Below the pieces are notes generated by a model. It was not told the DNA's origin. It ran no database searches and saw only the letters and a list, made by a program, of their open reading frames with translations. Positions 1 to 51,508 of a DNA stretch of 64,000 nucleotides are shown here, one piece after another. Each line of letters opens with the position of its first letter. The first letter of the stretch is position 1. The DNA is from Paraphysomonas bandaiensis (lineage: Eukaryota > Protista > Chrysophyceae), in NCBI GenBank assembly GCA_965644295.1, contig CBFFRP010000284.1, forward strand, positions 1 to 64,000. The letters are read 5' to 3'. The position numbers and the translations under genes were made by a program.

Positions 1-181
1 TTGAAGTATAAACTTCGCTTCCGTAGTTTCCCTATTGCATACGTACGACGTATATTGAATGAATGGACATTACACCACATGCATGCATATCCACACACTT
101 AGTACAATGTATCGACATGTTACATGTGTAATCTCTAATCATTATTCTCTTTACACCAAGTCTATACCTTATAGTTCAACT
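1..181 (+). repeat. 5' LTR (partial)
   Basis: Matches 5208-5388; ends TTCAACT immediately before the PBS. Confidence 0.95.
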
Positions 182-192
182 TGGTAGCGGAT
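182..192 (+). promoter_or_regulatory. Primer-binding site (TGGTAGCGGA, initiator-Met-tRNA-like)
   Basis: TGG start directly after the LTR; resembles the iMet PBS TGGTAGCAGAG/TGGTATCAGAG. tRNA identity is inferred. Confidence 0.75.
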
Positions 193-234
193 TCTCGCGA
201 TCTATAACCTTTGTTTGCCCTTTTATTCATTAGC

Positions 235-3200
235 ATGGCTCTCCCTGTCTCCAAAAACCCTATCCAGGAGTTAACACTGGATCAATGCAAACGATTATCA
301 TCTCACCTCGATAATCTGTCTCTTATACTTCCCTCTTGGGATGTTCCGCAGTATCCAGCACGTCTGCAAGACTTTGAAGCCTTCGAAACAGACTTTCGAG
401 CAATGCTGAAGTCGACAAAACTATTGGACATCATCACCGAGAAGTCCATACGTGTTGCGACACCTCCTATTGATGCTGATGATGATGTCAAAGCGCTTGC
501 GGAATGGCGTCAATCACTGTATGACGAAAAAAATATGATCGTATACTCTGCATTATGGCGCGCATTTCAGACCAATCCCTCCAGTCGTGCGCACATCGGA
601 TTGGACAGCGACAACGATGACGGTCTCCAGGCATGGAAGAATCTATTGGCCTATATCGACCGGACGAAATCTTCGGAAGACCGGGCTACGGAACGGCAGG
701 CCTTCTATTTGGCTAAACAGGGTTCCACTGAACAGGTTGCCTCCTTTGCCAAACGCCTGAAAACGATGGCGCAGCGGCATAATATCCCAGACGCCGACCT
801 CAATCAGCAGTTATTTACTGGCTTCAGAGACCCCTCCAAAGAGCAGTCTCTTCGCTCTCTTTTGCGTGCAACTATGCGTGGTTTGTCCTTCGAGGAAATT
901 CTTATTCGGATAGAAGAACAGCTGCCTCTCTATGAAACAAGCGCGTTACCCTCTTCCAAACAAAAATCAGTGTGTCCGCATTGTAACAAAAAATGCACAC
1001 ATTCTCCAGAAACTTGTTACAGAAATCCCAATTTTTCAGTTTCCAAGAAAAAACGGGATTTGGAAGACATTCACTGTTTGCGTTGCGGCCAATTTGGTCA
1101 TTACGTCATGAACTGCCCGAAAAGGCCTAAACCCCCCGCACCTCCTGCACGACAACCAGAAGTGCCTCAAAATGCTCCACAGCATGCTGCTAACCCTAGG
1201 CCCTCAATTTTGGTCAATAGAAGCGGTCGAGGACGTGGACGCCCACCCAAATCAAATCGTGGCAGAGGCCGTTCTGGCACACACCGTGCACCGACCAGAC
1301 ATGTACAGTTCATGGATACTGATGATTCCCCTTATTCACAGACACATAGTAGTGATTCCAATGATGTCTTGATGGTCCTTCCATCTTCTACAGTGGCCCC
1401 AAAGACTTCATCAGCATCAACTATACGCTTTATTCTTGATGGTGGATGTTTTGACCATTTGGTTAATGATTGTACGCATTTATCATGTTTTGTACCAACG
1501 TCACGCCATTTTATTAAGGTTGCTGATGACCATCAGCTAAAAGCGTCTGGAGAGGGCGATATTTCATTCTTCAAGAGAGTTAAATATTATCCACAGATCT
1601 CCCAGAATTTACTTTCTGAAGGGCTCATGTTTGATCAAGGGTGGCACTTCCGGCAGATGGACAATGGAGACAAGATTGCCTCCATCATGTACAATGGCGT
1701 TCGACATCAAATCTACTTCCATTATGATATGAGGTATTGGACTGCGAATCTTCCTATTCAAGGTCCTGCAATATGTGAACCTGTTGCTCGTTTTCCGAAC
1801 GATATTTGTCACGTCAGTGATCCCTCTGTCACATCCAACGCGTCCAAAGACTATACAGTTAGCTCATCCACTGATGCTTTGTTAATTCCGTCGTCATCCT
1901 TTGACCCGTATTTACTCCCTTCACCCACGTTGGATACCACCCTCAGCACCACAGTTTTAGCCGTTTTGCATGATGATTTGAAGGCAACTTTTCGTTCATC
2001 TACACCCGGCTGTTGTGGTTTTTCTGTGTCATATTGTCCTACCCCATGCACCAATGCTAGAAAGTCTTCTGCTGACGGCACAGTTCACACCCCTCCGCCC
2101 AAACGTCAGTGTGTTCGTCGCGACCGCAGCAGATACAGTAACGTTAAGACGCCTCCTAATTGCAGTTCAATGGCACCGGTCATCTCGAAGGCTGCACATG
2201 CGTTCTTATTACTCCATCTCCAATTAGGCCATCCGGCGTACTCCATTCTTTATGATGCCCTCCGACATGGCAAGATCACTGGCTTTCCATACTCATGGCG
2301 CTCTATTGATATCAATCAATTACCACACTGCGAAGTCGATTATATTTCCAAATCAACACGCTCTCGACCGTCCAAGTCCCCACGTATGCGTGCGGAATAC
2401 CCGGCTCAGATCATTCATGTGGACCTGAAAGGACCATTTATGACTCGTGGTATTGGTGGCGTGCGTTATTGGATGTTGTTTTTAGATGACTTTTCCACCA
2501 TGATGTTCATCTACTTTCTAAAGAAGAAATCTGATGCATTGGTAGAAGGTCTTCATCGCTTTGTCCTTGAAGAAGTATTTCCCTACGGTGTACGTGATTT
2601 TATTCTGCTTTCTGATCCGGGCACTGAGTTTATCAATGAGGACTTCAAGAATTACTGTCTCCGTAACAACATACGCCATATGCCCAGTCCGGCCGGTAAC
2701 AAACGGTACTCTGGTACTATTGAGCGTGGAAACAGAACCACTGCAGAGAAGGAGCGCTGCCTCAGAACATATTCTGGTTTGCCGAAGCGGACATGGCCTC
2801 TATCCGCGACACATGTCATATTATTGCATGCATTGAATTTTTCTCGCTCCCTTGGAATGACACCATGGGAAGCATGGCATGGTCAACCCCCGACTATCGC
2901 TAATCTACATGTATATGGCATGGAATGTTATTATCACAACCTACATTTCTCGTCATCGCAAGGCGGTAACCCTGGCGAAATTGTTCGTTTTGTGGGATAT
3001 GTCCCATACTCACGGTCCACGTATAAAGTGTATAGACCGAGCACAGGCATGGTCCTCGAGACTGCGGATGTCAGATTCATTCAGCATGCCTTTAAACTAG
3101 TGTCACCTTTCCAAGCACGGGACCGGATTCACGATGAGTCCGATGATGAACTTGTACAGGAGGAGGATACCGACGGGAATGATCCCTCCGTACAGTGTCA

Positions 3201-5118
3201 CAAACCCGATGCTATTTTTGAGCTTGACAAGAAATCTGTTGAAGCAGCCGACGGGTTCGCTACATCAGAAATCGTGTCACAGCCGGCTCCCGATGTGGTC
3301 CCTCAGACTGAAGGTCGCTCCTTCACCTCGACGGGTACAACCTCGCGGCAGCCACGAGAAAGAGATACACACACCCCTATTGTGCGCCGATCGACGCGAT
3401 CACGCAAGCCAGTCGAGCGACTTCTGTTCCATCTAGCTCTAGTGACTACAGCTTACGAGCCCACGATTATGGTTCATTCAGCTCCTGGTAGTGACGACAG
3501 CTACAATGTTTTTGCTGTGTTCGATGCTCCTCTATCTTATGCTGCTGCACAACGGAGTGCAGACAATGCTAAATGGGAGGAAGCTATGCAAGAGGAGTTA
3601 ACTGGACTCCAGGCGCAGGGAACATGGAAAGTAGTGGATATCCCTCCTGATGCAAACTTAATGCGATCAAAGTGGGTTTTCAAGAAGAAAACTGACAAAG
3701 ATGGCAACATAGTGCGTTATCGAGCAAGACTCGTAGTCAAGGGTTACACACAAATCCATGGTGTCGATTATGATGAGACATTCTCCCCTGTAGTTCGACA
3801 TTCGACATTACGTATTGTTCTTGCATTATGTGCTCATTATGGACTATATGTTCACCATTTGGATGTGCCAAAGGCTTTTCCACAGTCTGACATTGACTAT
3901 GATTGCTATATGTCAGCACCCCCAGGCAGCAGACTCCCACGAGGCAAGTGTTATAAACTGTTAAAGTCTCTCTATGGTCTTAAACAGGCTAGTAGACTAT
4001 TTCATAATATGATGACTGCATTTTTATTATCCATATCATTTACACAATGTACCTCAGATACGTGTGTATTTTATCACCAATCTGATGATGGATTCGTCAT
4101 TATATGCGTATATGTTGATGATATTGCCATTGCTGCATCCAGCATTAGCCTATTGAATAAATTTTGCGTGTTATTACACCAAAAATTTCGTACTAACGAT
4201 TTAGGTCCCCTCGAGTGGTTTCTTGGGATCCGTATTCACACATCGAAGGATCGACACACAGTCCAACTCTCTCAGTGTCAATACATCAACGACTTAATCG
4301 AATATGTGGACCCGATCCACCCGATCAACTCAACATCTCCAGTACCTATGGCCAACCATGTTAAATTATCTGCCTCGATGTCTCCAAGCACGGACGAGGA
4401 GAAAATCTATATGGGGAATATCCCTTATCGCACAGTGGTTGGAAAATTAATGTATGTTATGGTGTGCACTCGCCCTGATATTGCTTTTGCCGTTGGATGT
4501 TGTGCACGTTTTCTGTCTAACCCCGGCAGGGAACACTGGAATGCTGTGGTACAGATATTGAAATACTTGAAAGGTTCGGCGGATCTTCAGCTGACCTATA
4601 GGCGCCAATCCAACAATCCACCTACGCTACAGGCTTTTTCTGACGCCAATTGGGCAAATTATGATGTAGATACTCGACGTTCTCAGTCTGGCGCTGCATT
4701 TCTCCTAGCTGGTGCTTGTATTGCATGGTTTTCCAAACTCCAACAATCTCTAGCCCTGTCAACAATGGATTCTGAGTATTATTCTATGGGTGATACATCC
4801 AAGGAAGGTATTTCACATAACACAGTCTGTGCAGAGTTGACTTTCCCGCGCTCACCTGCAAAACCCGTTCAGCCCGATACCCTGGAAATCAAAGTCGACA
4901 ACACATCTGCTATTAATCTATCGGTTAACCCAGTGTTTCACAAGCGGTCTAAACACATTGAAATTCGTCATCATTTCATTCGACAACTCGTTCAAAACAA
5001 TATCGTTCGTTTCGTGTATGTTGATTCTGCCAACAATGTTGCCGATGTTATGACTAAGCCCCTTCGCAAGACAGAATTCAGACATTTCAGGTCAATTCTT
5101 TTTGGTTGCTCTACTTAA
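235..5118 (+). CDS. Copia Gag-Pol polyprotein
   Basis: Zinc knuckles CPHCNKKCTHSPETC and CLRCGQFGHYVMNC; protease FILDGG; integrase HLQLGH, VDLKGP, SDPG, IERGNR; RT KSLYGLKQA and YVDD; RNase H SDANWA and KHIEIRHHF. First ATG at 235. Confidence 0.96.
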   Translation: MALPVSKNPIQELTLDQCKRLSSHLDNLSLILPSWDVPQYPARLQDFEAFETDFRAMLKSTKLLDIITEKSIRVATPPIDADDDVKALAEWRQSLYDEKNMIVYSALWRAFQTNPSSRAHIGLDSDNDDGLQAWKNLLAYIDRTKSSEDRATERQAFYLAKQGSTEQVASFAKRLKTMAQRHNIPDADLNQQLFTGFRDPSKEQSLRSLLRATMRGLSFEEILIRIEEQLPLYETSALPSSKQKSVCPHCNKKCTHSPETCYRNPNFSVSKKKRDLEDIHCLRCGQFGHYVMNCPKRPKPPAPPARQPEVPQNAPQHAANPRPSILVNRSGRGRGRPPKSNRGRGRSGTHRAPTRHVQFMDTDDSPYSQTHSSDSNDVLMVLPSSTVAPKTSSASTIRFILDGGCFDHLVNDCTHLSCFVPTSRHFIKVADDHQLKASGEGDISFFKRVKYYPQISQNLLSEGLMFDQGWHFRQMDNGDKIASIMYNGVRHQIYFHYDMRYWTANLPIQGPAICEPVARFPNDICHVSDPSVTSNASKDYTVSSSTDALLIPSSSFDPYLLPSPTLDTTLSTTVLAVLHDDLKATFRSSTPGCCGFSVSYCPTPCTNARKSSADGTVHTPPPKRQCVRRDRSRYSNVKTPPNCSSMAPVISKAAHAFLLLHLQLGHPAYSILYDALRHGKITGFPYSWRSIDINQLPHCEVDYISKSTRSRPSKSPRMRAEYPAQIIHVDLKGPFMTRGIGGVRYWMLFLDDFSTMMFIYFLKKKSDALVEGLHRFVLEEVFPYGVRDFILLSDPGTEFINEDFKNYCLRNNIRHMPSPAGNKRYSGTIERGNRTTAEKERCLRTYSGLPKRTWPLSATHVILLHALNFSRSLGMTPWEAWHGQPPTIANLHVYGMECYYHNLHFSSSQGGNPGEIVRFVGYVPYSRSTYKVYRPSTGMVLETADVRFIQHAFKLVSPFQARDRIHDESDDELVQEEDTDGNDPSVQCHKPDAIFELDKKSVEAADGFATSEIVSQPAPDVVPQTEGRSFTSTGTTSRQPRERDTHTPIVRRSTRSRKPVERLLFHLALVTTAYEPTIMVHSAPGSDDSYNVFAVFDAPLSYAAAQRSADNAKWEEAMQEELTGLQAQGTWKVVDIPPDANLMRSKWVFKKKTDKDGNIVRYRARLVVKGYTQIHGVDYDETFSPVVRHSTLRIVLALCAHYGLYVHHLDVPKAFPQSDIDYDCYMSAPPGSRLPRGKCYKLLKSLYGLKQASRLFHNMMTAFLLSISFTQCTSDTCVFYHQSDDGFVIICVYVDDIAIAASSISLLNKFCVLLHQKFRTNDLGPLEWFLGIRIHTSKDRHTVQLSQCQYINDLIEYVDPIHPINSTSPVPMANHVKLSASMSPSTDEEKIYMGNIPYRTVVGKLMYVMVCTRPDIAFAVGCCARFLSNPGREHWNAVVQILKYLKGSADLQLTYRRQSNNPPTLQAFSDANWANYDVDTRRSQSGAAFLLAGACIAWFSKLQQSLALSTMDSEYYSMGDTSKEGISHNTVCAELTFPRSPAKPVQPDTLEIKVDNTSAINLSVNPVFHKRSKHIEIRHHFIRQLVQNNIVRFVYVDSANNVADVMTKPLRKTEFRHFRSILFGCST

Positions 5119-5196
5119 ATGCTTGTGTGCTGTGATATTCTAGTGTATTAAGTATAGACATGCATTTCCATATCATTCAGAACGTACGCTTAGTTT

Positions 5197-5205
5197 AAGG
5201 GGGAG
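5197..5205 (+). promoter_or_regulatory. Polypurine tract
   Basis: AAGGGGGAG directly before the 3' LTR. Confidence 0.85.
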
Positions 5206-5388
5206 AGTTGAAGTATAAACTTCGCTTCCGTAGTTTCCCTATTGCATACGTACGACGTATATTGAATGAATGGACATTACACCACATGCATGCATATCCA
5301 CACACTTAGTACAATGTATCGACATGTTACATGTGTAATCTCTAATCATTATTCTCTTTACACCAAGTCTATACCTTATAGTTCAACT
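5206..5388 (+). repeat. 3' LTR, 183 bp, termini AGTTGAA...TTCAACT
   Basis: Identity to 1-181 ends at 5388; perfect 7-bp terminal inverted repeat. Confidence 0.93.
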
Positions 5389-5464
5389 GTTTGCTATCCT
5401 TTTTCACCTTTTGACCGAGTCTTTTTGCTTGCTTGTTTATTTTTTTAATACCAACTCTTTTCAT
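5389..5464 (-). pseudogene. Small basic viral ORF (MKRVGIKKINKQAKRLGQKVKKDSK...) interrupted by the copia insertion
   Basis: ATG at 5464 just after the penton stop; open reading runs up to the LTR edge. Confidence 0.6.
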
Positions 5465-5488
5465 ATGTTTTTAATAATGTAAAGATTT

Positions 5489-6208
5489 TTATTTATATCG
5501 AATCACTAATGTACAGGACCAGTGTTGACCATTTAAATCCACAATTCTACCTCTTTGATCAAGCAATCGTAAGTGTGTATTGACTAAATTCTCAATTGAG
5601 TTAACCTGAGACATTAAATCCCCTTGATAGTAAATGACGCTATTTGGAGGAACCGAGTTTTGAATGCTGCAAAGGTAACATGCGTTCCGGGTATCGTTGC
5701 TTGATAAATTTTTTGTAATAAAATTGCTTGAGGTGATATGTAATGTGCGAATAGGAAATAGATTGATATTTGTATTGCTGGTAATAGTTTGATCAGTTGA
5801 GGTATAAGGTTGACCTTCGCTAAGTCCGAGCAGTTCAAAGCATGTAGACGTTGTGTATAATGTAAATTCATAATTTGCATGGGTGATGGTGTATGTATTT
5901 GTTGTGGATTGATAAGTAAAGATTAACCCTGTATTGTTTTGGAGAACTGTTTTTAAAGTGCTCACATTATAATTTCCTTGAGGGATGGTGAATTGTTGAA
6001 TTCCATCACCGTTAATCTCATATACTAACAACTGATTAATATTATCAACATTATAGAAACTTGTAGGTATTTCCGCGGATTTTACCCCTACTGTTAATTC
6101 AGTAATTTGCTTAGGTAGGTCTATCCTTGGTAGATGAAAAATTACATCGCTCGTGTTCTGATTGATTTGTAAACTGGCATCTCGGGAGTTTAAAAATACT
6201 TGAATCAT
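5489..6208 (-). CDS. Minor capsid protein (penton, single jelly-roll) of PLV/Polinton type
   Basis: N-terminal VFLNSRD, AEIPTSFYNV, IPQGNY, ELLGL and C-terminal LRLLDQRGRIVDLNGQHWSCTL; beta-rich 239 aa; adjacent to the ATPase. Confidence 0.8.
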   Translation of the reverse strand: MIQVFLNSRDASLQINQNTSDVIFHLPRIDLPKQITELTVGVKSAEIPTSFYNVDNINQLLVYEINGDGIQQFTIPQGNYNVSTLKTVLQNNTGLIFTYQSTTNTYTITHANYEFTLYTTSTCFELLGLSEGQPYTSTDQTITSNTNINLFPIRTLHITSSNFITKNLSSNDTRNACYLCSIQNSVPPNSVIYYQGDLMSQVNSIENLVNTHLRLLDQRGRIVDLNGQHWSCTLVIRYK

Positions 6209-6338
6209 TGCTTACTACTCTTGATAAAATGTTTTCGAGGATCATTTCGAATCCGGGGATATGGTCATATTCACACCCTCCGAGTCTTTTATTTATTTCA
6301 TTTATATCGATAAGTAGATGGTAATCATAATGTTCCAT
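6111..6338 (-). CDS. Possible small viral protein between the ATPase and penton genes
   Basis: ATG 14 nt after the ATPase stop, but overlaps the penton 5' end; no motif. Confidence 0.3.
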   Translation of the reverse strand: MEHYDYHLLIDINEINKRLGGCEYDHIPGFEMILENILSRVVSNDSSIFKLPRCQFTNQSEHERCNFSSTKDRPT

Positions 6339-6351
6339 TTATAATATGGAA

Positions 6352-7077
6352 TTATTTTATTTGAAGCTGGTTAAAGTTTTTATAAAATATGTTAGATACA
6401 ATATCGATATCTAGATGATTATATGCTCGATCAAATATGTAATTATATAACTCAATTGCGTGATCTTTTTTCATACGGAGTAACTCTTCGGATACCAGCT
6501 CAACTTCCTTGCGATTTCTAAACTGGAATATTGTGACATTAGTTAACATTTTACGTAGTGTTAATTCAAATAGGTTGTAAGACTGAAGAGTAAATATAGT
6601 TGATAAACCAATGTGTCTTGATTTTACGATGATTTTCTTTAATAGTGTAACTATTTGTTTATCTTTCAAATCATTAGCAAAGTCATCTATGATTAATAGA
6701 GAATTCTCAACAGGTAATTTATTTTCAATACTATGTTTTTTAAATAAAGCAACTTCATCATATATATCTACTAATACCCCATCTGTAAGCTCATGGTATT
6801 TTTTATCGTGGTTTTCAAAGGGGTGGTCCTTCACAGATAAATAACTTGATTCTGGGGAAATAAAGTAAATGTTGTCAAATTTTCCTCTGTAGTACTTGCT
6901 TGATCTAAATAATGAGAGTAGGAGGGAAGATTTACCTGAACCGGGTGCGCCGATTAAAGCATATACAAACCCATTGCGGTTTGGTAGGTTAGGGTGGATA
7001 TTTGGGATAAATATAGACATTGCTTCTTTCACAGGTTGGATATTAGGTAAATTACTTGGTTGCTCTGTTATGTGCAT
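6352..7077 (-). CDS. A32-like (FtsK-HerA) genome-packaging ATPase
   Basis: Walker A GAPGSGKS, Walker B LLIIDD, Arg-finger SRH and downstream TLQ motif in 241 aa. Confidence 0.92.
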   Translation of the reverse strand: MHITEQPSNLPNIQPVKEAMSIFIPNIHPNLPNRNGFVYALIGAPGSGKSSLLLSLFRSSKYYRGKFDNIYFISPESSYLSVKDHPFENHDKKYHELTDGVLVDIYDEVALFKKHSIENKLPVENSLLIIDDFANDLKDKQIVTLLKKIIVKSRHIGLSTIFTLQSYNLFELTLRKMLTNVTIFQFRNRKEVELVSEELLRMKKDHAIELYNYIFDRAYNHLDIDIVSNIFYKNFNQLQIK

Positions 7078-7108
7078 TTTATCTTACTTATCCTAATTAT
7101 TTTTATTT

Positions 7109-8185
7109 TTAGGATTTATTTTTAGGAGGTCTACCTCTTCCTCTTTTTGGTGGTGGTGGAGGTGGTGGTAAAAGTGGAGTTTTCGGGGATTTTGATTTTT
7201 CACTCTGTGGAGATTGTGTAATGTTTGAATCATCAAATTCCTCTATTGCTTTATGACTTTTTGGTTCTCTTTTTGTTTCTGTATTTTCTACCACTTTCTT
7301 TTTTGTTTGAAATGCTGGTAATTCTTGATATTCCTCCTCGGTTATTGGAGCAGTACGTCTTGTTCGTTGTACCTTTGGTACTGTTCTTAATCCCTTCGGT
7401 GCTTGATAATCTTCATCAGGTAATGATTCACTGCTATCTGTTGATAATGTATCAATCAACTCGCTGTGGCTATATTCTTTGCTTTGAGGAGTTTGTGGAG
7501 CTGCCGCTGTTAACGTAGAGTGTACATTTGATTGTTCTTCATTCATCTGCATGAACCGCTCACTTTCAGGTGTAAATGGTAATTCTCCTCCACCCATCTG
7601 CATAAAACGTTCGCTTTCTGGTGTGTATGGTGTTTTTAGACCTTCTTCTTGTGGTTTAATTGGTGATGGCTCTGTGAACGTAACATGTGGTTCAGAGATA
7701 TCAAATGCTTTTCGTCGTTTTGGTTTTGGTTTTGTTTCAGTCTGAACTAATCCTGTTACTAGATTTCCAGCTGTACTCATTCGTGATTTCACTTTATTTT
7801 GATCAATCGCATTTGCGACGTGGTAAGCAATAGCTTCGTTTCTCTCGTTCCAATCTCTCTTTGTTGGATTTGGTGTTTCCGATTGTGTGGAAGGCTTTGA
7901 GTTTTGCAAAAGTTCTAACTTTGCTTGAAGCAGTCCATCGTTTAACTTTTGTGTTTCTGCTTTGTTTCCTAATCCAAACAATGGGTTTGTTGAAACATTA
8001 CCCTGAAGTGGTTTGTTTGATTTCTCTTGAGGGATAAATAATCCTCTATCATCCTTTTTCTTTCTCCTGGCAGCTTTCTTTTTCCGACGTGCTCGTAGTT
8101 TATTTTGTATACGCTTTTTATCAATTCCGTATAACTTCACCAAATCATCGAGGTCTAAATATATTTTATTTTTTGTTTTTCCCAT
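7109..8185 (-). CDS. Viral basic/low-complexity protein with C-terminal AT-hook (putative core/DNA-binding protein)
   Basis: RARRKKKAARRKKK near the N-terminus; duplicated P(Y/F)TPESERFMQM; ends PPPPPPPKRGRGRPPKNKS. Confidence 0.7.
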   Translation of the reverse strand: MGKTKNKIYLDLDDLVKLYGIDKKRIQNKLRARRKKKAARRKKKDDRGLFIPQEKSNKPLQGNVSTNPLFGLGNKAETQKLNDGLLQAKLELLQNSKPSTQSETPNPTKRDWNERNEAIAYHVANAIDQNKVKSRMSTAGNLVTGLVQTETKPKPKRRKAFDISEPHVTFTEPSPIKPQEEGLKTPYTPESERFMQMGGGELPFTPESERFMQMNEEQSNVHSTLTAAAPQTPQSKEYSHSELIDTLSTDSSESLPDEDYQAPKGLRTVPKVQRTRRTAPITEEEYQELPAFQTKKKVVENTETKREPKSHKAIEEFDDSNITQSPQSEKSKSPKTPLLPPPPPPPKRGRGRPPKNKS

Positions 8186-8196
8186 TCTTTATTTTA

Positions 8197-8715
8197 CTAA
8201 CGAAAGAAATTATCGTATGTTTGAAATCGCTCTTTTCGAACTCTTGCTCTGTTATTCGATTGTCGCTTAGGTCCTCGTTTATAGTGTTGGTATTCTTCGT
8301 CATCGTAATCATCTGCGTCATCTGATTCCTCATCAGTTTCACTGGATTCACTTTCCGATTCTTCCACAACAATCCGTGTTTTTGGTCTTCGTTTCTTTTT
8401 CCTGACAACTATATATTGTTCATCGGGGGTTTCTTCCTCGTCCGATGGAATTAACTTTGTAGTCACCATAGGTGTTTTAACCTTTTTCTTTTTTAGTTGT
8501 TGATTTTCTTGTTGAATCAAGAGTTTTGAAGCCTCTATCATCTTTTCTTTTTTCTTTGCCTCAATAGATGCTATTCTCTTCTCACGAACTTTTTGAAATG
8601 CTTTCATCTGTGCTTCACTTCGGGGTTTTTTAGGTTTAGTGAGAGGAGTTTGAATTTCCGGGGTATTTTCTTCGATGGGAGCTTCGATTTGTTCGTTATC
8701 GTAAGTATCGGACAT
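8197..8715 (-). CDS. Viral charged protein with alternating basic and acidic blocks
   Basis: ATG at 8715; KKPRSEAQMKAFQKVREKR helix, poly-K and poly-D/E tracts; collinear with the capsid module. Confidence 0.7.
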   Translation of the reverse strand: MSDTYDNEQIEAPIEENTPEIQTPLTKPKKPRSEAQMKAFQKVREKRIASIEAKKKEKMIEASKLLIQQENQQLKKKKVKTPMVTTKLIPSDEEETPDEQYIVVRKKKRRPKTRIVVEESESESSETDEESDDADDYDDEEYQHYKRGPKRQSNNRARVRKERFQTYDNFFR

Positions 8716-8773
8716 GTCTTTTAATAATACCAAGAAAATAATTTGGTTGGAAATTTAATAATCTAAAATTTTT

Positions 8774-9325
8774 ATGTTGATTATAATAAACATGCATCGA
8801 CAACCACCCGCACCACCAAAAGAATCAAAACCTGAAGTATACAACGAAATGAAAACACCGAGTATTATTTCAACCAGCGAAAACCCTTTTAAGTATCAAC
8901 CTGTACCTGAAGTGAGTCTTTACGGTGCTAAACTTAAAGCTGATCATTTGTCCAAGAAAAACATACTGTTTACTAATGAAGCTAACCAATTTGTAAATGC
9001 TGTTCAGGATGCCCTTTCCAAATTTGATAAAAACTCGAATAGGTATAGCGAGGATATTTTGCTCTTTTGTATGTCTGCATGTGAAAATGCAATCCTCGGT
9101 AAAAAACAGGGTGAATTAAAATTACAAATGGTAAAAGCTTGTGTGAAACCATTCTTCAATAATGATGAATTATTAATTGAGAAATGGGTCTCGCTTCTTA
9201 TGCCAAAAATTCTTAATTATAAATTCTGGAATCGCAACTTACGTAAGCTCGCTAGATTTTTTTTAAACTGTGTTTCGATGAAGCAACAAGCACCATCACC
9301 CGACACGCAATCAAAGTTTCTGTAA
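8774..9325 (+). CDS. Viral hypothetical protein; candidate -1 frameshift extends it to 9360
   Basis: Intronless 183-aa ORF divergent from the capsid module; T TTT TTA AAC in phase at 9259-9268. Confidence 0.7.
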   Translation: MLIIINMHRQPPAPPKESKPEVYNEMKTPSIISTSENPFKYQPVPEVSLYGAKLKADHLSKKNILFTNEANQFVNAVQDALSKFDKNSNRYSEDILLFCMSACENAILGKKQGELKLQMVKACVKPFFNNDELLIEKWVSLLMPKILNYKFWNRNLRKLARFFLNCVSMKQQAPSPDTQSKFL

Positions 9326-9363
9326 AATATCTTCTCCCACTTTTAATAGCAATTGTTTAGCAT

Positions 9364-9445
9364 GGGATTCTGTGTCACCCACACAAATTATGGTAGGGGA
9401 TTCTGTGTCACCCACACAAATTATGGTAGGGGATTCTGTGACACT
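9364..9445 (+). repeat. 33-bp tandem direct repeats (2 full copies + 1 partial)
   Basis: GGGATTCTGTGTCACCCACACAAATTATGGTAG starts at 9364 and 9397, with a partial copy at 9430. Confidence 0.95.
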
Positions 9446-9645
9446 CGTACGTCACGCGGATTCACACCCACGGATTATTCAATGTCGGTTAATTTCACAA
9501 GTGAGGGACCTTAGAAATCGACTTCGAAAAACGCTTTGCAGTTGTTGACACTTGCCAAAACCTTTGACTGAACCACCCTTCTTTCGGTATGTGCTCCCAC
9601 CAATTTTCAGTAAGTGCTATCGCCTATAAATTGATGGAAGGGGTC

Positions 9646-9708
9646 TATATTGATATACGGGGAACTATGTGACACTAAAGTGTCACAGAGTCCCCGTATA
9701 TCAATATA
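9646..9708. repeat. Near-perfect 63-nt palindrome/hairpin
   Basis: TATATTGATATACGGGG-aacta-TGTGACACT aa AGTGTCACA-gagt-CCCCGTATATCAATATA. Confidence 0.93.
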
Positions 9709-9804
9709 TATCATCATCACCACCACAACTGGCATTATGGCACTGGCTTTTTATAACATAAACTATATAATAAATTTTATTTTATAACTTTTTCTAATTT
9801 TCAT

Positions 9805-9839
9805 AAAAGCCAAAAAGCCAGAAAGCCAAAAAGCCAAAA
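9805..9839 (+). repeat. (AAAAGCCA)x4 octamer array beside a very AT-rich tract
   Basis: aaaagcca aaaagcca gaaagcca aaaagcca; inverted copy TGGCTTTT at about 9744. Confidence 0.85.
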
Positions 9840-10078
9840 CTATATTTTTATTTTATTATAAGATAATTATTTAATATTATATAAAGTAATTAATTTTTAT
9901 TTAAAGTATAGTATTATTAATATAATTATATAAGCTATAATAATTATATTTAAAGATAGAGTGAAAAGGAAGAATAATAAAACGAATGTTTTATTATGAT
10001 ACGAGAGCCCTTCTGGCTCAGGAAGAAATGCCTAAGCGGCATAGAGCGCCCCCCCGGCCCTTCCGCCTTTCTGTGTGT

Positions 10079-11287
10079 CTACCTGATGAAGAGAAATTCT
10101 ACGGATTCACTGCTGCGGATTGGTTTGATACTATCGTAGAAGTTCTCAATAAATTTGGAGTTGAGGTTAACGCTGACAATGTTTGCGACATTGTTGAGTT
10201 TTAGCTTGGAGATAACTGTGCTACAAACAGAAAATTGGCTACTGATTCTGGTAACACCGTATTACTTGTGTGAAATTGTCGTATGTTATAATATATATTA
10301 GGTGTACCCCTAGTTGGATGTGCATCTCACCGACTAAATCTCGCTGTCAATGAACTCATTGGCAGCAAAGAGAAGAGTAATAACCAAGGAGATGTGACAA
10401 GATCTGACGAAGGCATTAGGCCTCTTATTCGCAAAGTAGACCTACTAATGGGGAAGTTGAAGCAGATTAAGAATGCTGCATTGCTACGTGGCCAAACCAG
10501 TCTGCTACCAGAAAGGGTAAATGTCACAAGATGGTCTTCTATGTTTCAGGTTCTCGTAAAGTGGATGCGTATAAAAGATCATGTATTAAAAATTGAAGAC
10601 TTACCGCTTGCTGTTACTGATATGATTCCTACTCCTCGACGGAATACCGAAATAATCGCCCTTGTAGACGACCTGAGGAAGTTTGAAAGCGTCTCGAAAT
10701 TGCTTCAAACTGGAGGATCAAGTCAAGTGAATCTTTATGAATGCCGGAACATATTTGATGGCTTATTGAGGGACTTTAGGCCAAAGTATCCACTATCTGC
10801 TTTACAGAAAAACAGTCCCATTGTTAATGATCCGAATTTCGAGAATGGAATTGCAAAACTCCAAGCAGGCGAAGAATTGGACTTGACAAGATCTGAGAAA
10901 GATGCTGTTAGAATATATCTCCGTTCAGACAGTGATTATTGCAACAATACAGAGAATGATGAAGCTGAAGTTGGCTATGCGGAAAAAATTCTTCAATCAG
11001 CTCAAAAACTTAAGAAGCGGAAAGTTGAAATATCTAAGTACAGGTGCACGAGTCATGTAGTATGTACTTCCAATACGTGTGAACGCCTGTTCAGCGCAGA
11101 AAAACTGATTATATCAGTGTTGCGCAAACGTATGCATCCTACTACACTTAATATGCTGTTGTTTCAGAAAGCTAACCGACAGTTGTGGCCGGATGCAAGC
11201 ATATTTCAATCAATATTGAATGAATATGGTGATGATGATGTCACCGATGATGGCTCAGAGGATGAGTATGAGGAAACTTTTAATTAG
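10079..11287 (+). pseudogene. hAT transposase pseudogene
   Basis: GDNCATNRKLA, VPLVGCASHRLNLAV, TRWSS, TSNTCERLFS; in-frame TAG at 10202-10204; intron about 10251-10301; N-terminus missing. Confidence 0.85.
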
Positions 11288-44035: not shown

Positions 44036-44324
44036 TCCGGTAGGTAGATCCATAACGTGACATACTGTGAGATCATATGATTAATGTGTGAGGTATGATA
44101 GTGTGTGTATGGGGTTATGAGGAATATGAGAGTGTAGATTGAGATAGTTTGTATTGATATGCCATCTGTATGATGACCAGCAGTGTGATGGATAGATGGA
44201 TGACTAGATGAATGAGAGGAGAAGATCACCATATCCTGTGCACATATCCATACCTACCTACAGCAGCAGAGTACCTGCCTACCTACACGTATATATATAT
44301 ACATAAGTACGTACGTACCTATCT

Positions 44325-45245
44325 ACCTACCTACATACATACATACATGCATACATACGTACATACATACATACATACATACATACATACATACATACAT
44401 ACATACATACATACATACATACATACATACATACATACATACATACATGCATACATACATACATACATACATACATACATACATACATACATACATACAT
44501 ACATACATACATACATACATACATACATACATACATACATACATACATACATACATACATACATACATACATACATACATACATACATACATACATACAT
44601 ACATACATACATACATACGTACATACATACATACATACATACATGCATACATACATACATACATACATACATACATACATACATACATACATACATACAT
44701 ACATACATACATACATACATACATACATACATACATACATACATACATACATACATACATACATACATACATACATACATACATACATACATACATACAT
44801 ACATACATACACATGCATACATACATACATACATACGTACATACATACATACATACATACATACATACATACATACATACATACATACATACATACATAC
44901 ATACATACATGCATACATACATACATACATACATACATACATACATACATACATACATACATACATACATACATACATACATACATACATACATACATAC
45001 ATACATACATACATACATACATACATACATACATACATACATACATACATACATACATACATACATACATACATACATACATACATACATACATACATAC
45101 ATACATACATACATACATACATACATACATACATACATACATACATACATACATACATACATACATACATACATACATACATACATGCATACATACATAC
45201 ATACATACATACATACATACATACATACATACATACATACATACA

Positions 45246-45279
<34 letters not shown>

Positions 45280-45673
45280 CATACATACATACATACATAC
45301 ATACATACATACATACATACATACATACATACATACATACATACATACATACATACATACATACATACATACATACATACATACATACATACATACATAC
45401 ATACATACATACATACATACATACATACATACATACATACATACATACATACATACATACATACATACATACATACATACATACATACATACATACATAC
45501 ATACATACATACATACATACATACATACATACATACATACATACATACATACATACATACATACATACATACATACATACATACATACATACATACATAC
45601 ATACATACATACATACATACATACATACATACATACATACATACATACATACATACATACATACATACATACA

Positions 45674-45705
<32 letters not shown>

Positions 45706-45890
45706 ATACATACATACATACATACATACATACATACATACATACATACATACATACATACATACATACATACATACATACATACATACATACATACATA
45801 CATACATACATACATACATACATACATACATACATACATACATACATACATACATACATACATACATACATACATACATACATACATACA

Positions 45891-45922
<32 letters not shown>

Positions 45923-45968
45923 ATACATACATACATACATACATACATACATACATACATACATACAT
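44325..45968. repeat. About 1.6-kb (ATAC)n microsatellite
   Basis: Direct reading; sparse interruptions (ATGC, GTAC, ATAAT). Confidence 0.99.
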
Positions 45969-45990: not shown

Positions 45991-47415
45991 ATGCATGCAC
46001 AGTATGCATCTGTTATGTCTTTGACTAAGGCACGCATTCCAGGGATGTCACTTATTCAATCCTCATTATCATCTACACGGTATCCTTATATCCACAATCC
46101 TGTGTCAGGTGGACATGGAGGGAGCGTGCTGTATACCGTGGACACTCCATCACTGATCTTATCATTGCCTGCAGTCAAGAGAAACCTCACTAACTTACGT
46201 AATCAATTATCAAATTATCCTCATATTCATCTTCGTCCACATGTTAAAACACATAAATGTTTGGAGATATGTGAACTACAGCTACGAAAGCATTCGATCT
46301 CACATGATTCATTCAGTGGTGGAGGTGCAGTGGGTCTGTGCTTTCAGATACTTGATGAGCTTCAGCCTGTAGTAGATGATATTAGTAGTGATAACTCCAT
46401 ATTCACACTATCTAATCATGGAAATCCGGCTTTACCTAACAGCATGATAGATCTATTAGTTACTAATCAGATTGTTGGGCCCATGAAGTTGAATCGTTTA
46501 CAATCTATGGCATCTTCCGTTAAGTCGAGCGCACTTATATCTGTCCTTGTAGATGATTTGACGAATTTACGCCATATATCAGATCTAGCATCTAAAACTA
46601 ATACAACCTTTGGTGTATTTGTCGAAGTAAATGCGGGTCAGCAGCGATGTGGTGTGGCAGCTGATGACGGAGAACTGATTGTTGCCCTGGCTGAGACCAT
46701 CCGCCAGAACCCTATGCTGATGTTCAGGGGTATTCACTGCTATCAGGGTATGCTTCAACATGTTCGTTCTCGTGAGGAGCGTTTGTCTTTGGTTCTGTCC
46801 CAACCTGTACATGCAGCTTCTTTGGCTTGCAGCCACTTGCGTACCGCTGGAATACCTGTCGACATCATTACAGGCGGGGGGACGGGAACTTACATGTACG
46901 AGGTTCAGGGCGGTATCCACAACGAAGTACAGCCTGGATCTTACGTACTAATGGACGGTGACTATGATGATAATGAGCAAAGTGAAGATGATCTCAAGTT
47001 TGAGAATGCGTTGTGGATACATAGCACTGTTGTGTCCACTGCTGTCCAATCCACCCGAGAGAAACAAGTTGTAGTGGATGTAGGCACGAAGGGTGTTGAC
47101 CTTACAAGTGGAGCGCCGCACATGACCCTTCAGTCTGTGAAACATGGATTTAATGGGTCACGCCTGCCTAGTGTGACATATACTTGTGGGGGCGATGAAC
47201 ATGGTGTATTGACTGCCGTTAATGCTGAGGCGAGTGAAATCCTCGGAAAGCTACAAGTCGGGGATACTGTTCGACTAATTCCAAGACATATAGATCCAAC
47301 CGTTAACATGTATCAGTGGTTTGTAGTGGTAGATGATGAAGTTAGCTTTGGAAGTGAATCTGGACCTGTTGTATCTTCCATTTGGGGAATTCATGGGCGA
47401 TCTCCTGGTTATTGA
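45991..47415 (+). CDS. D-threonine aldolase / DSD1-family fold-type III PLP enzyme
   Basis: LRPHVKTHK (PLP Lys), HCYQG, GGGTGT, EVQPGSYVLMD, DEHG, PRHIDPTVN (HxD metal site). Start codon uncertain. Confidence 0.9.
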   Translation: MHAQYASVMSLTKARIPGMSLIQSSLSSTRYPYIHNPVSGGHGGSVLYTVDTPSLILSLPAVKRNLTNLRNQLSNYPHIHLRPHVKTHKCLEICELQLRKHSISHDSFSGGGAVGLCFQILDELQPVVDDISSDNSIFTLSNHGNPALPNSMIDLLVTNQIVGPMKLNRLQSMASSVKSSALISVLVDDLTNLRHISDLASKTNTTFGVFVEVNAGQQRCGVAADDGELIVALAETIRQNPMLMFRGIHCYQGMLQHVRSREERLSLVLSQPVHAASLACSHLRTAGIPVDIITGGGTGTYMYEVQGGIHNEVQPGSYVLMDGDYDDNEQSEDDLKFENALWIHSTVVSTAVQSTREKQVVVDVGTKGVDLTSGAPHMTLQSVKHGFNGSRLPSVTYTCGGDEHGVLTAVNAEASEILGKLQVGDTVRLIPRHIDPTVNMYQWFVVVDDEVSFGSESGPVVSSIWGIHGRSPGY

Positions 47416-49174: not shown

Positions 49175-51508
49175 ATGAATCAGTGTTCATATATGTCGCA
49201 TATATCTGCTCTTAATGATGATGTTCTTCGTCTCATCATCTCGATGATTCCACACAGAGCTGTCCTTCCAGTGATGTTGACTTGTAAGAGATTTCATGAT
49301 ATAGTATACACTGATAAGAGGATAGTACAGTCACATGCATCTCACTATTGCATGACCAACTCAATGGTCTCATGGGCTCTGTCGATGGGCTGCCCACACG
49401 TCAAACTAATGAGTACATGTGCACTATACGGCAGACTACAGCAGATGAAATACATCCTGAGCCTCGTATACACACCTCCACTTATGCAGAACCCTATGCA
49501 CATATATTTATTGACTGACGACACTTGTTTTTCTGCTGCTACTGGTGGGCACTTAGATGTTCTGAAGTGGCTTCGTTCACAGGACCCTCCATGTCCATGG
49601 AGTCAATTCACTTATACTACTGCTGCTGCTGGTGGCCACTTGGATGTTCTGAAGTGGCTTCGTTCACAGGACCCTTCATGTCAATGGGATGAACTCACTT
49701 GTAGTGAGGCTGCTGGTGGACACTTGGATGTGTTGCAGTGGCTTCGTTCACAGGACCCTCCATGTCCATGGGATAGCTCGACTTGTCAAACTGCTGCAGC
49801 TTGTGGACAGTTGGATGTTCTGATATGGGTTCGTTCACAGGACCCTCCATGGCCATTGGATAAAGGCGTTTGCTATACTGCTGCTGGTGGTGGCCACTTG
49901 GATGTTCTGAAGTGGCTTCGTTCACAAGACCCTCCATGTCCATGGGGTAGGAGCACTTGTAAAGGTGCTGCTGGTGGTGGACACTTGAATGTTCTAAAGT
50001 GGCTACGTTCACAGGACCCTCCATGTCCATGGGGTGAACTCACTTGTAGTGTAGCTGCAGGTGGTGGATATTTGGATGTTCTGATGTGGCTCCGTTCACA
50101 GGACCCTCCATGTCCATGGGGTGAACTCACTTGCAAAGCTGCTGCTAGTGGTGGCCACTTGGATGTTCTGAAGTGGCTTCGTTCACAGGACTCACCCTGT
50201 CCGTGGGATGAAGTCACTTGCATCAAGGCGGCTGCTGGTGGTGGCCACGTAGATGTTCTGAAGTGGTTTCGTTCACAAGACCCTCCATGTCCATGGGGTG
50301 AACTCACTTGTAGTGTAGCTGCTGCTGGTGGCCACTTGGATGTTCTGAAGTGGCTTCGTTCACAGGACCCTTCATGTCAATGGGATGAACTCACTTGTAG
50401 TGAGGCTGCTGGTGGACACTTGGATGTGTTGCAGTGGCTTCGTTCACAGGACCCTCCATGTCCATGGGATAGCTCGACTTGTCAAACTGCTGCAGCTTGT
50501 GGACAGTTGGATGTTCTGATATGGGTTCGTTCACAGGACCCTCCATGGCCATTGGATAAAGGCGTTTGCTATACTGCTGCTGGTGGTGGCCACTTGGATG
50601 TTCTGAAGTGGCTTCGTTCACAAGACCCTCCATGTCCATGGGGTAGGAGCACTTGTAAAGGTGCTGCTGGTGGTGGACACTTGAATGTTCTAAAGTGGCT
50701 ACGTTCACAGGACCCTCCATGTCCATGGGGTGAACTCACTTGTAGTGTAGCTGCAGGTGGTGGATATTTGGATGTTCTGATGTGGCTCCGTTCACAGGAC
50801 CCTCCATGTCCATGGGGTGAACTCACTTGCAAAGCTGCTGCTAGTGGTGGCCACTTGGATGTTCTGAAGTGGCTTCGTTCACAGGACTCACCCTGTCCGT
50901 GGGATGAAGTCACTTGCATCAAGGCGGCTGCTGGTGGTGGCCACGTAGATGTTCTGAAGTGGTTTCGTTCACAAGACCCTCCATGTCCATGGGGTGAACT
51001 CACTTGTAGTGTAGCTGCAGGTGGTGGATATTTGGATGTTCTGATGTGGCTTCGTTCACTGGACCCTCCATGCCCATGGGGTGATAGTATTTTCAAAGCT
51101 GCTGCTAGTGGTGGACATTTGAATGTTCTGAAGTGGCTTCGCTTACAGGACCCTCCATGTTCATGGGATGAAAGCATTTGCTTCGCTGCCGCTAGATATG
51201 GCCACGTAGATGTTCTGAAATGGCTTCGTTCACAGGACTCTCCATGTCCATGGGGTGAACTCACTTGCAAAGCTGCTGTTATAGGTGATCACGTTGATGT
51301 TTTAAAGTGGCTTCGTTCACAAGACCCTCCATGTCCATGGGGTGAATACACATGCTATGTAGCTGCTGCCTATGGGCACTTGGATGTTCTGAAGTGGCTT
51401 CGTTCACAGTACCCTCCATGTCCATGGAATGGACACACTTGCGCTGTTGCCGCTGATGTAAACGGACACTTGGATGTTCTGGATTGGATTTATTTTGATG
51501 ACGTATAG
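49175..51508 (+). CDS. F-box + ankyrin-like repeat protein (about 22 repeats of about 29 aa), intronless
   Basis: N-terminal LNDDVLRLIISMI...VMLTCKRF (F-box); repeats AA.GGHLDVLKWLRSQDPPCPW. Confidence 0.88.
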   Translation: MNQCSYMSHISALNDDVLRLIISMIPHRAVLPVMLTCKRFHDIVYTDKRIVQSHASHYCMTNSMVSWALSMGCPHVKLMSTCALYGRLQQMKYILSLVYTPPLMQNPMHIYLLTDDTCFSAATGGHLDVLKWLRSQDPPCPWSQFTYTTAAAGGHLDVLKWLRSQDPSCQWDELTCSEAAGGHLDVLQWLRSQDPPCPWDSSTCQTAAACGQLDVLIWVRSQDPPWPLDKGVCYTAAGGGHLDVLKWLRSQDPPCPWGRSTCKGAAGGGHLNVLKWLRSQDPPCPWGELTCSVAAGGGYLDVLMWLRSQDPPCPWGELTCKAAASGGHLDVLKWLRSQDSPCPWDEVTCIKAAAGGGHVDVLKWFRSQDPPCPWGELTCSVAAAGGHLDVLKWLRSQDPSCQWDELTCSEAAGGHLDVLQWLRSQDPPCPWDSSTCQTAAACGQLDVLIWVRSQDPPWPLDKGVCYTAAGGGHLDVLKWLRSQDPPCPWGRSTCKGAAGGGHLNVLKWLRSQDPPCPWGELTCSVAAGGGYLDVLMWLRSQDPPCPWGELTCKAAASGGHLDVLKWLRSQDSPCPWDEVTCIKAAAGGGHVDVLKWFRSQDPPCPWGELTCSVAAGGGYLDVLMWLRSLDPPCPWGDSIFKAAASGGHLNVLKWLRLQDPPCSWDESICFAAARYGHVDVLKWLRSQDSPCPWGELTCKAAVIGDHVDVLKWLRSQDPPCPWGEYTCYVAAAYGHLDVLKWLRSQYPPCPWNGHTCAVAADVNGHLDVLDWIYFDDV
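49622..51013 (+). repeat. 696-bp tandem duplication (8 repeat units) inside the ankyrin gene
   Basis: 49622-50317 matches 50318-51013; identical antisense ORFs offset by 696. Confidence 0.92.

What the first reader, a model, noticed from the sequence alone, without database searches (positions are those of the whole stretch)
5389..10080. Endogenous Polinton-like virus/virophage capsid module in a protist chromosome
Seen: AT-rich, intronless block of abutting ORFs within an intron-rich genome, with intact A32-type ATPase and penton-like genes, three uncharacterised ORFs and a structured end. Established: ATPase, penton and major capsid protein form the morphogenetic module of Polintons, PLVs and virophages. 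Inference: this is the right arm of an integrated virus. The major capsid, replication and integrase genes and the other terminus should lie upstream of position 1, on the far side of the copia.
Basis: partly seen in the sequence, partly recalled or inferred. Interest (0 to 1): 0.85.

Follow-up and report, generated by a model that had tools for sequence, protein, structure and literature searches.

The report
Integrated Polinton-like virus fragment, copia-interrupted
This stretch is a real piece of a small capsid-forming DNA virus (a Polinton-like virus) sitting in a eukaryotic chromosome and cut by a young copia retrotransposon. Such insertions are already known to be common in protists.

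Summary
Window 5389-9985 has 34.2% G+C against 40.5% elsewhere. It carries five ORFs of 172-358 aa, where 500 shuffles gave none of 170 aa or more. ORF 6352-7077 is an intact A32/FtsK-HerA packaging ATPase. ORF 5489-6208 folds as a single-jelly-roll penton; its best solved matches are the mavirus and Sputnik pentons.

The other ORFs (358, 178, 183 aa and a broken 127-aa gene) have counterparts in 15-18 kb metagenomic virus genomes. One of these, L003, is complete at 15,672 bp with 99-nt terminal inverted repeats. Those genomes also carry a modelled double-jelly-roll major capsid protein.

Three copia-free copies from a Tara Oceans scaffold, a Logan contig and an ENA contig are 94.8-99.9% identical. 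All leave the window at the copia LTR edge. In the three relatives that can be read (L026, L023, L003), the capsid gene follows the gene that the copia interrupts. The window starts at the copia's 5' LTR, so that side cannot be seen.

The relatives have helicase or primase-helicase genes and no recognisable polymerase B, protease or integrase. The element is therefore a Polinton-like virus, not a Polinton or a classical virophage. It is a new member of a known kind, of modest interest.

The parts
1..5388 (+). Nested Ty1/copia LTR retrotransposon. It is a neighbour inserted into the viral element and is not part of the virus. LTRs lie at 1-181 and 5208-5388. The polyprotein ORF is 211-5118.
   Evidence: The LTRs are 100% identical over 181 nt. 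The 1635-aa ORF is open and carries RVT_2 (E 1.3e-62), rve, a retroviral SH3-like domain and a zinc knuckle. A purine tract lies just before 5208 and a primer-binding-like site just after 181.
1..5464 (-). Small lysine-rich gene, 127 aa in intact copies, that follows the penton gene. It starts at 5464 and runs off the left edge of the window. It is broken once, by one insertion (the copia).
   Evidence: It is complete in the copia-free contigs L001 and L021. Homologues hold the same position in L026 (41% identity, E 7e-21), L023 (31%, E 1e-11), L003 and L009.
5489..6208 (-). Penton (minor capsid, single jelly-roll) protein, 239 aa, intact.
   Evidence: The AF2 model has pLDDT 77.6. Foldseek matched mavirus penton 6g41 at E 3e-8, Sputnik 3j26_N, and TVS1 and giant-virus pentons at E 1e-13 to 1e-8. 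It has 18 homologues at 32-54% identity, and 12 of the 18 aligned sequences hit DUF5901.
6111..6338 (-). Doubtful 75-aa ORF between the ATPase and penton genes, overlapping the start of the penton gene.
   Evidence: Small ORFs of 97-105 aa hold the same overlapping position in L026, L027 and L023. The L023 ORF matches weakly at E 1.7e-4. Against it: the spacer differs by 17 gap columns in variant L022.
6352..7077 (-). A32/FtsK-HerA-type genome-packaging ATPase, 241 aa, intact.
   Evidence: Pfam Pox_A32 at E 3.5e-11, above the cut-off. PHROG 2666 terminase large subunit at E 7e-12. It is 43-63% identical to ATPases beside penton and capsid genes on virus contigs. Walker A and B residues are invariant. 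The only PDB match beyond the P-loop is the STIV B204 packaging NTPase, E 2.9e-4. Against variant L022 there are 22 synonymous and 2 nonsynonymous codon differences.
7109..8185 (-). 358-aa low-complexity Lys/Pro/Ser-rich protein with a basic Gly-Arg-Pro tail. It is intact. A DNA-binding or core-protein role is inferred only.
   Evidence: There is no family hit. The first 21 residues are 76% identical to the N-terminus of the 381-aa protein of L003 that lies beside the ORF178-like gene. It is identical in L001. An internal 51-nt duplication lies at 7531-7631.
8197..8733 (-). 178-aa protein (172 aa from the first ATG), basic in the middle and acidic at the C-terminus, intact, function unknown.
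   Evidence: Its N-terminal 70 residues are 35-46% identical to ORFs in L016, L006, L017, L008, L003 and L023.
8774..9325 (+). 183-aa conserved protein of this virus family, intact, function unknown. It is transcribed divergently from the rest.
   Evidence: It has 90 cluster representatives at E<=1e-3, most of them about 155-180 aa. Homologues lie on nine of the virus contigs. No PDB or Pfam assignment was found, except that 3 of the 33 aligned sequences hit DUF5760 weakly.
9326..9985 (.). Non-coding AT-rich end region (32.6% G+C). It holds a 33-nt tandem repeat (9364-9444), a 63-nt palindrome (9646-9708), an 8-nt tandem repeat (9806-9837) and AT-rich inverted repeats (9860-9950). It may be the terminus or origin region of the element. 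The exact right boundary is unknown.
   Evidence: It has no copy elsewhere in the window or in the relatives.
9986..11287 (+). Right-hand neighbour: a remnant resembling a hAT transposase. It is not part of the virus.
   Evidence: G+C returns to host level here. ORF 10394-11287 gives a weak hit to the hAT dimerisation domain, E 0.0035, below the cut-off.

Best explanation
Window 5389 to about 9985 is one arm of a Polinton-like virus (PLV) genome integrated in a eukaryotic, probably protist, chromosome.

Read on the minus strand, it encodes in order:
- a 178-aa protein;
- a 358-aa low-complexity basic protein;
- the A32-type ATPase, which would pump DNA into a preformed capsid;
- possibly a small ORF;
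- the penton protein, which would form the twelve capsid vertices;
- a small lysine-rich gene.

A divergent 183-aa gene and a repeat- and palindrome-bearing non-coding end lie on the other side.

A young copia retrotransposon has landed in the small lysine-rich gene. It separates this arm from the remainder, which by synteny should begin with the double-jelly-roll major capsid gene. That remainder lies off the window.

What is shown: gene identities, homology to free virus genomes, the nested copia, the existence of copia-free near-identical copies, and purifying selection on the ATPase.

What is inferred: that the missing side holds capsid and replication genes, that the non-coding end is the genome terminus, that the 358-aa protein binds DNA, and that the lineage still forms particles.
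For: Gene identities:
- ATPase.
- Penton fold.

Homology of five or six ORFs to 15-18 kb virus contigs from IMG/VR. One of these, L003, is a complete 15,672-bp genome with 99-nt perfect terminal inverted repeats.

The family's 450-470-aa protein folds as a double jelly roll. The model has pLDDT 89 and matches PBCV-1 Vp54, Sputnik and mavirus capsid proteins at E 1e-16 to 1e-12.

Synteny: the order ATPase, small ORF, penton, 127-aa-like gene, capsid gene is seen in L026, the closest relative (ATPase 63%, penton 54%), and in L023. L003 keeps the same order without the small ORF.

Integration:
- The segment is contiguous with eukaryotic genes for a GAF-phosphodiesterase, ornithine decarboxylase, a kinesin and an F-box/ankyrin protein.
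- No other virus-like region exists in the window.
- Relative L023 is likewise embedded in a 206-kb contig beside a Ty3/gypsy element.

Copia nesting: L001 (99.93%), L021 (99.6%, a Tara Oceans scaffold) and L022 (94.8%) all stop matching the window at 5388 and continue with the viral gene. The LTRs are identical.

Constraint: 22 synonymous against 2 nonsynonymous codon changes in the ATPase between the window and L022.

Precedent: endogenous PLVs with embedded or adjacent retrotransposons are documented in protists (PMC10120064).
Against: - The capsid gene, the replication genes and the second terminus were not seen for this copy.
- No integrase of any known type was found in the relatives, by Pfam scans only. 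The route of integration is therefore unexplained.
- The right boundary is not defined by an empty site or a target-site duplication.
- The gene order differs from L003 and L023, where the ORF178-like gene is divergent from the ATPase gene.
- The ORF183-like gene is internal, not terminal, in relatives such as L008 and L012. This weakens the reading that the non-coding end is a terminus.
- Host identity is unresolved.
- The copia-free contigs are short (1.5-3.2 kb). They could come from free virus or from other host individuals.
Confidence: 0.85

Rival explanations
1. It is an endogenous virophage in the strict sense (Sputnik or mavirus class) or a Polinton/Maverick proper, with polymerase B, rve integrase and maturation protease on the missing side.
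For: The penton's best solved-structure matches are the mavirus and Sputnik pentons. The missing side of this copy is unseen. Virophages and Polintons share this same morphogenetic module (PMC4642659).
Against: The sequence relatives at 38-63% identity sit on genomes that carry D5-like or Herpes_ori_bp-like helicases and GIY-YIG nucleases. No polymerase B, rve integrase or cysteine protease was found on them in Pfam scans. That gene content matches the published PLV profile (PMC4642659). The family's capsid model matches chlorovirus and iridovirus capsid proteins better than those of Sputnik or mavirus.
Confidence: 0.07
2. It is a fragment of an integrated giant virus (Nucleocytoviricota). Giant viruses also encode an A32 ATPase and a penton.
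For: Pfam names the ATPase after poxvirus A32. Many penton fold matches are giant-virus minor capsid proteins, and 12 of the 18 aligned penton sequences hit DUF5901.
Against: All close sequence relatives are on 15-18 kb contigs. One of them is complete, with terminal inverted repeats. The only giant-virus-bin contig found, L020, matched 31 residues. No further viral gene lies in the remaining 54 kb of the window.
Confidence: 0.03
3. The viral segment is not integrated at all. The contig is an assembly chimera that joins free-virus reads to host DNA through repeats.
For: The window starts at the copia LTR edge, which would fit an assembly break. Near-identical copia-free contigs exist in metagenomes. 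Published work notes that such regions assemble poorly (PMC10120064).
Against: The copia is inserted inside a viral gene, with a clean switch at the LTR end. This needs a nuclear residence of the viral DNA. Relative L023 is embedded in a 206-kb contig. The right side runs without repeats into a hAT-like remnant and host genes.
Confidence: 0.05

Closest known systems
Polinton-like viruses (PLVs) as defined by Yutin et al. 2015 (PMC4642659), including Tetraselmis viridis virus S1 / TsV-N1 and PgVV/Gezel-14T
   Same: It has the minimal morphogenetic module of packaging ATPase and penton, plus a double-jelly-roll capsid protein in the relatives. The relatives have 15-18 kb genomes, one with terminal inverted repeats. 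They show no protease, polymerase B or rve integrase, and carry patchy accessory genes (GIY-YIG, primase-helicase, methylases). A Tetraselmis viridis virus S1 protein is the second-best structural match of the penton.
   Different: No named isolate came back as a sequence-level hit. The placement within PLV groups was not determined, because no tree was made. The relatives also lack the tyrosine recombinase found in some PLVs.
Endogenous PLVs and virophages of protist genomes (Bellas et al. 2023, PMC10120064)
   Same: It is an AT-shifted insertion with intact viral genes. Retrotransposons lie embedded in it or beside it. Close relatives are present in aquatic metagenomes.
   Different: That survey reports that most endogenous elements encode an integrase. 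None was found in this family's relatives. Here only one arm of the element is visible.
Mavirus and Sputnik virophages (solved pentons 6g41, 3j26_N)
   Same: The penton fold and the A32-type ATPase are shared. The capsid architecture is inferred to be the same.
   Different: Penton sequence identity is only about 10-14%. No protease, polymerase B or rve integrase was found in the relatives. Dependence on a giant virus is unknown.

Membership tests
Polinton-like viruses (PLV) | A32/FtsK-HerA-type packaging ATPase | tested here: met
   Pox_A32 at E 3.5e-11, above the cut-off. The Walker motifs are invariant. The profile matches the STIV B204 packaging NTPase.
Polinton-like viruses (PLV) | Minor capsid (penton) protein with a single jelly roll | tested here: met
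   The AF2 model matched the mavirus, Sputnik, TVS1 and giant-virus pentons in Foldseek.
Polinton-like viruses (PLV) | Double-jelly-roll major capsid protein of the PLV type | tested here: inconclusive
   It is absent from the window. It is present directly after the 127-aa-like gene in L026, L023 and L003, and it folds as a double jelly roll. For this copy it is predicted only.
Polinton-like viruses (PLV) | Genome of about 15-30 kb, often with terminal inverted repeats | tested here: inconclusive
   Relative L003 is 15,672 bp with 99-nt inverted repeats. Only one end of the window copy is visible, so its repeats cannot be paired.
Polinton-like viruses (PLV) | No maturation protease and, as a rule, no polymerase B plus rve integrase | tested here: inconclusive
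   None was found in Pfam scans of L003, L023, the contig of P0013 and 20 representative ORFs of the relatives. The missing half of this copy is unseen, and divergent enzymes could escape Pfam.
Polinton / Maverick | Protein-primed polymerase B and rve integrase | tested here: inconclusive
   Neither is in the visible arm or in any relative scanned. Neither can be excluded for the unseen side.
Virophages (Sputnik/mavirus class) | Cysteine maturation protease together with a virophage-type capsid protein | tested here: inconclusive
   No protease was found in Pfam scans of the relatives. The capsid model matches chlorovirus and iridovirus capsids at E 1e-16, ahead of Sputnik (6e-14) and mavirus (3e-12).
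Virophages (Sputnik/mavirus class) | Replication dependent on a co-infecting giant virus | not testable with these tools
   This is a lifestyle trait and cannot be read from this sequence.
Endogenous viral element | Physical continuity with host chromosomal genes | tested here: met
   On the right the segment is continuous with a hAT-like remnant and with eukaryotic genes. A host-type retrotransposon is nested in a viral gene. Misassembly is not excluded.

The most novel reading that the evidence does not exclude
This PLV lineage enters chromosomes without any integrase of a known type: no rve integrase or tyrosine recombinase was found in the relatives scanned. On this reading, the iteron-plus-palindrome end at 9364-9708 is the site through which an unrecognised viral or host activity replicates or joins the genome. 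That would make it a new integration route for small capsid-forming DNA viruses of eukaryotes.
Probability: 0.1. Interest if true: 0.6.

Novelty: new member of a known kind. Interest (0 to 1): 0.35.

Why it matters
The segment adds a well-documented endogenous Polinton-like virus to a host lineage that has no close annotated relative in the databases searched.

Near-identical copies occur in ocean metagenomes. The packaging ATPase is under purifying selection between variants. The lineage is therefore probably a living virus and not a fossil.

The nested copia has identical LTRs. It gives a natural marker for asking, from sequence data alone, how such insertions are gained, inactivated and spread in populations.

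No recognisable integrase was found in the family, which is a small open question. None of this changes the current picture of these elements.

Tried and rejected
- Sequence-only searches of the penton against PDB and Pfam gave nothing useful. The fold search was needed.
- Sequence and profile searches of the capsid family against PDB and Pfam were blank.
- The 183-aa family has no PDB or Pfam assignment. NCBIfam and PHROGs added nothing for the uncharacterised ORFs.
- Walking outward failed. Exact look-ups of the 183-aa, 172-aa and copia proteins were not on record. The 358-aa and ATPase look-ups returned only L001. The contigs for P0259 and P0260 were too short. The 144 bases after the 127-aa gene in L021 are short repeats with no next gene.
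- Rfam and tRNA scans of the window were empty, so there is no tRNA-type integration target.
- The bacterial promoter and terminator scan is not meaningful for a eukaryotic virus. Upstream regions showed no shared motif by eye.
- Host identification through one enzyme gave only 41-45% matches. The run accession is in no paper searched.
- No ATPase tree with cellular and giant-virus references was built, because no reference set could be fetched.
The split host genes were searched ORF by ORF.
- No contig looked human.
- Animal-virus entries (adenovirus, adomavirus, iridovirus) appeared only as names in fold-search tables. None was fetched.
Full report
OBSERVATION

The block 5389-9985 stands out by composition. 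It has 34.2% G+C, against 40.5% for 9986-64000 and 45.0% for the copia. No 4.6-kb window elsewhere falls below 35.8%.

It holds ATG-ORFs of 358, 241, 239, 183 and 172 aa separated by short AT-rich spacers. In 500 shuffles the longest ORF averaged 75 aa and none reached 170 aa.

The end region carries a 33-nt unit repeated 2.5 times (9364-9444) and a 63-nt palindrome (9646-9708). The palindrome's hairpin z-score is -8.2. The two share a 15-nt motif found four times here and nowhere else in the window, against 0.34 expected.

THE TWO NAMED GENES

ORF 6352-7077(-) passes Pfam's threshold for Pox_A32, at E 3.5e-11, and hits a PHROG packaging family.
- Its Walker A and B residues are invariant across 15 relatives.
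- A profile of the family matches ABC proteins only over the P-loop. Over about 95 residues beyond the P-loop it matches only the STIV B204 genome-packaging NTPase.

ORF 5489-6208(-) has no sequence-level family.
- An AlphaFold model built on 18 homologues has pLDDT 77.6.
- The model matches the mavirus penton crystal structure (E 3e-8), the Sputnik penton and adenovirus penton bases in the PDB.
- It also matches Tetraselmis viridis virus S1, mavirus and many giant-virus minor capsid proteins among predicted viral structures.
- It is a single-jelly-roll vertex protein.

RELATIVES

The penton search found about 245-aa homologues at 40-54% identity on contigs of 13-18 kb. A scan of IMG/VR returned 19 loci. 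On these:
- the ATPase is 44-54% identical and the penton 38-45%;
- the 183-aa ORF is 25-30% identical in nine loci;
- the N-terminus of the 178-aa ORF is 35-46% identical in several loci.

The 358-aa ORF shares only its first 21 residues (76% identity) with the 381-aa protein that neighbours the ORF178-like gene in L003.

L003 is a complete linear genome of 15,672 bp with perfect 99-nt terminal inverted repeats. It encodes:
- a tail-collar-domain fibre-like protein;
- the ATPase and the penton;
- a 454-aa conserved protein;
- a helicase of Herpes_ori_bp type;
- a RING protein.

The 454-aa family has more than 787 members. The copy from L023 was modelled at pLDDT 89. The model matches PBCV-1 Vp54, grouper iridovirus, Sputnik, mavirus and PRD1 capsid proteins at E 1e-16 to 1e-11. 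It is therefore a double-jelly-roll major capsid protein.

Accessory genes in the relatives are GIY-YIG nuclease, D5_N primase-helicase, DNA methylases, ribonucleotide reductase small subunit and a TET-associated glycosyltransferase.

No polymerase B, rve integrase, tyrosine recombinase or cysteine protease appeared in any Pfam scan. This is the gene profile that defines Polinton-like viruses, as opposed to Polintons and virophages (PMC4642659).

THE COPIA AND THE FAR SIDE

Window 1-181 equals 5208-5388 at 100% identity. Between them lies an open 1635-aa copia polyprotein. A purine tract abuts 5208, so the LTR is about 180 nt long and the window begins within about one base of the 5' LTR. Nothing beyond it can be read.

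Three public contigs match the viral segment and all stop matching at 5388:
- L001, from a Logan assembly, at 99.93%;
- L021, a Tara Oceans scaffold, at 99.6%;
- L022, at 94.8%.

Past that point they continue into a 127-aa lysine-rich ORF whose start is in the window. One viral gene is therefore broken, once, by one insertion. All other viral ORFs in view are intact.

Homologues of the 127-aa gene follow the penton gene in L026 (41%), L023 (31%), L003 and L009. In L026, L023 and L003 the next gene is the major capsid gene. L026 is the closest distinct relative, with ATPase 63% and penton 54% identical.

The remaining 54 kb of the window holds no further virus-like sequence.

INTEGRATION AND HOST

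To the right, G+C returns to host level at about 9986. There a hAT-like remnant begins, supported only weakly by a PF05699 hit at E 0.0035.

Eukaryotic genes follow: a split ornithine decarboxylase, a kinesin fragment, a 1149-aa GAF-phosphodiesterase, a DSD1-type enzyme and an F-box/ankyrin protein.

Relative L023 sits in a 206-kb contig beside a Ty3/gypsy element. This mirrors published cases (PMC10120064).

The best named matches of the DSD1-type enzyme are a diatom (Odontella, from a transcriptome) and Triparma, at 41-45%. The host is probably a stramenopile-like protist without a close annotated relative, but this is only a hint.

IS THE LINEAGE LIVE?

Between the window and variant L022, the ATPase segment differs at 22 synonymous and 2 nonsynonymous codons and has no internal stop. 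The penton is about 1% diverged. This pattern indicates purifying selection and mosaic exchange between variants.

The ATPase-penton spacer differs by 17 gap columns, which speaks against the 75-aa ORF being a conserved gene. Small ORFs do occupy the same place in the relatives.

THE END REGION

The repeats and the palindrome are real, but nothing shows that they are the genome terminus.
- They have no counterpart in the relatives or elsewhere in the window.
- The ORF183-like gene is internal in several relatives.
- L003 does carry its terminal 50 nt again at two internal sites, so repeated terminal motifs occur in the family.

I put about even odds on 9326-9985 being the terminal or origin region.

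VERDICT

This is a genuine endogenous Polinton-like-virus arm with a young nested copia. It is a new member of a known kind.

The labels 'virophage' and 'integrase upstream' are not supported by what the relatives encode.

RULES AND SLIPS

- No repaired, joined, consensus or ancestral sequence was built.
- The pieces on either side of the copia were compared apart.
- No animal-virus record was fetched.

Three slips need declaring:
- The script printed the bounds of the visible piece. That is more detail on a break than the operators allow. I have left both in place and do not repeat the detail here.
No result depends on them.
- My readings of a hAT signature, of a primer-binding-like site and of the Gly-Arg-Pro tail of the 358-aa protein as an AT-hook are recollections and were not tested.

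Noticed in passing
window 1-5388: The copia element looks very young. Its LTRs are identical over the 181 nt that can be compared, and its 1635-aa polyprotein ORF is uninterrupted. The window's first base falls within about one base of the start of the 5' LTR. That could be a contig end and not a coincidence.
   Followed up: partly
window 44291-45968: A 1.7-kb perfect-like (ATAC)n microsatellite of about 419 copies at 97% match. It gives extreme strand skew and sits directly upstream of the DSD1-type enzyme ORF (45991-47415).
   Followed up: no
window 49175-51508: A 777-aa F-box plus ankyrin ORF. Its body is a tandem array of 22 copies of an 87-nt (29-aa) unit at 79% identity (49522-51441).
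   Followed up: no
window 9986-11287: A remnant resembling a hAT transposase abuts the viral end. The Pfam hit to the dimerisation domain is below threshold. It appears to lack the N-terminal half of a full transposase.
   Followed up: partly
L022 (ENA ERZ17294217) against window 5388-6703: This variant is mosaic. The ATPase part is 6.8% diverged, almost all of it synonymous. The adjacent penton is about 1% diverged and encodes the same protein as the Tara copy. This suggests recombination between co-circulating variants.
   Followed up: partly
L003 1-50, 11384-11433, 14856-14905: The first 50 nt of the terminal inverted repeat of this complete relative recur, inverted, at two internal intergenic sites with 84-88% complementarity.
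   Followed up: no
L023 319-6603 and 15370-19381: The integrated relative on a 206-kb contig lies next to a Ty3/gypsy chromovirus. It is followed by genes for DUF285 (BspA-like) and MORN-repeat proteins. No terminal inverted repeats of 25 nt or more were found around it.
   Followed up: partly
L021 2253-2396: After the 127-aa gene, the Tara scaffold ends in short tandem repeats that re-use the gene's last codons. This may be why all copia-free contigs break there.
   Followed up: no
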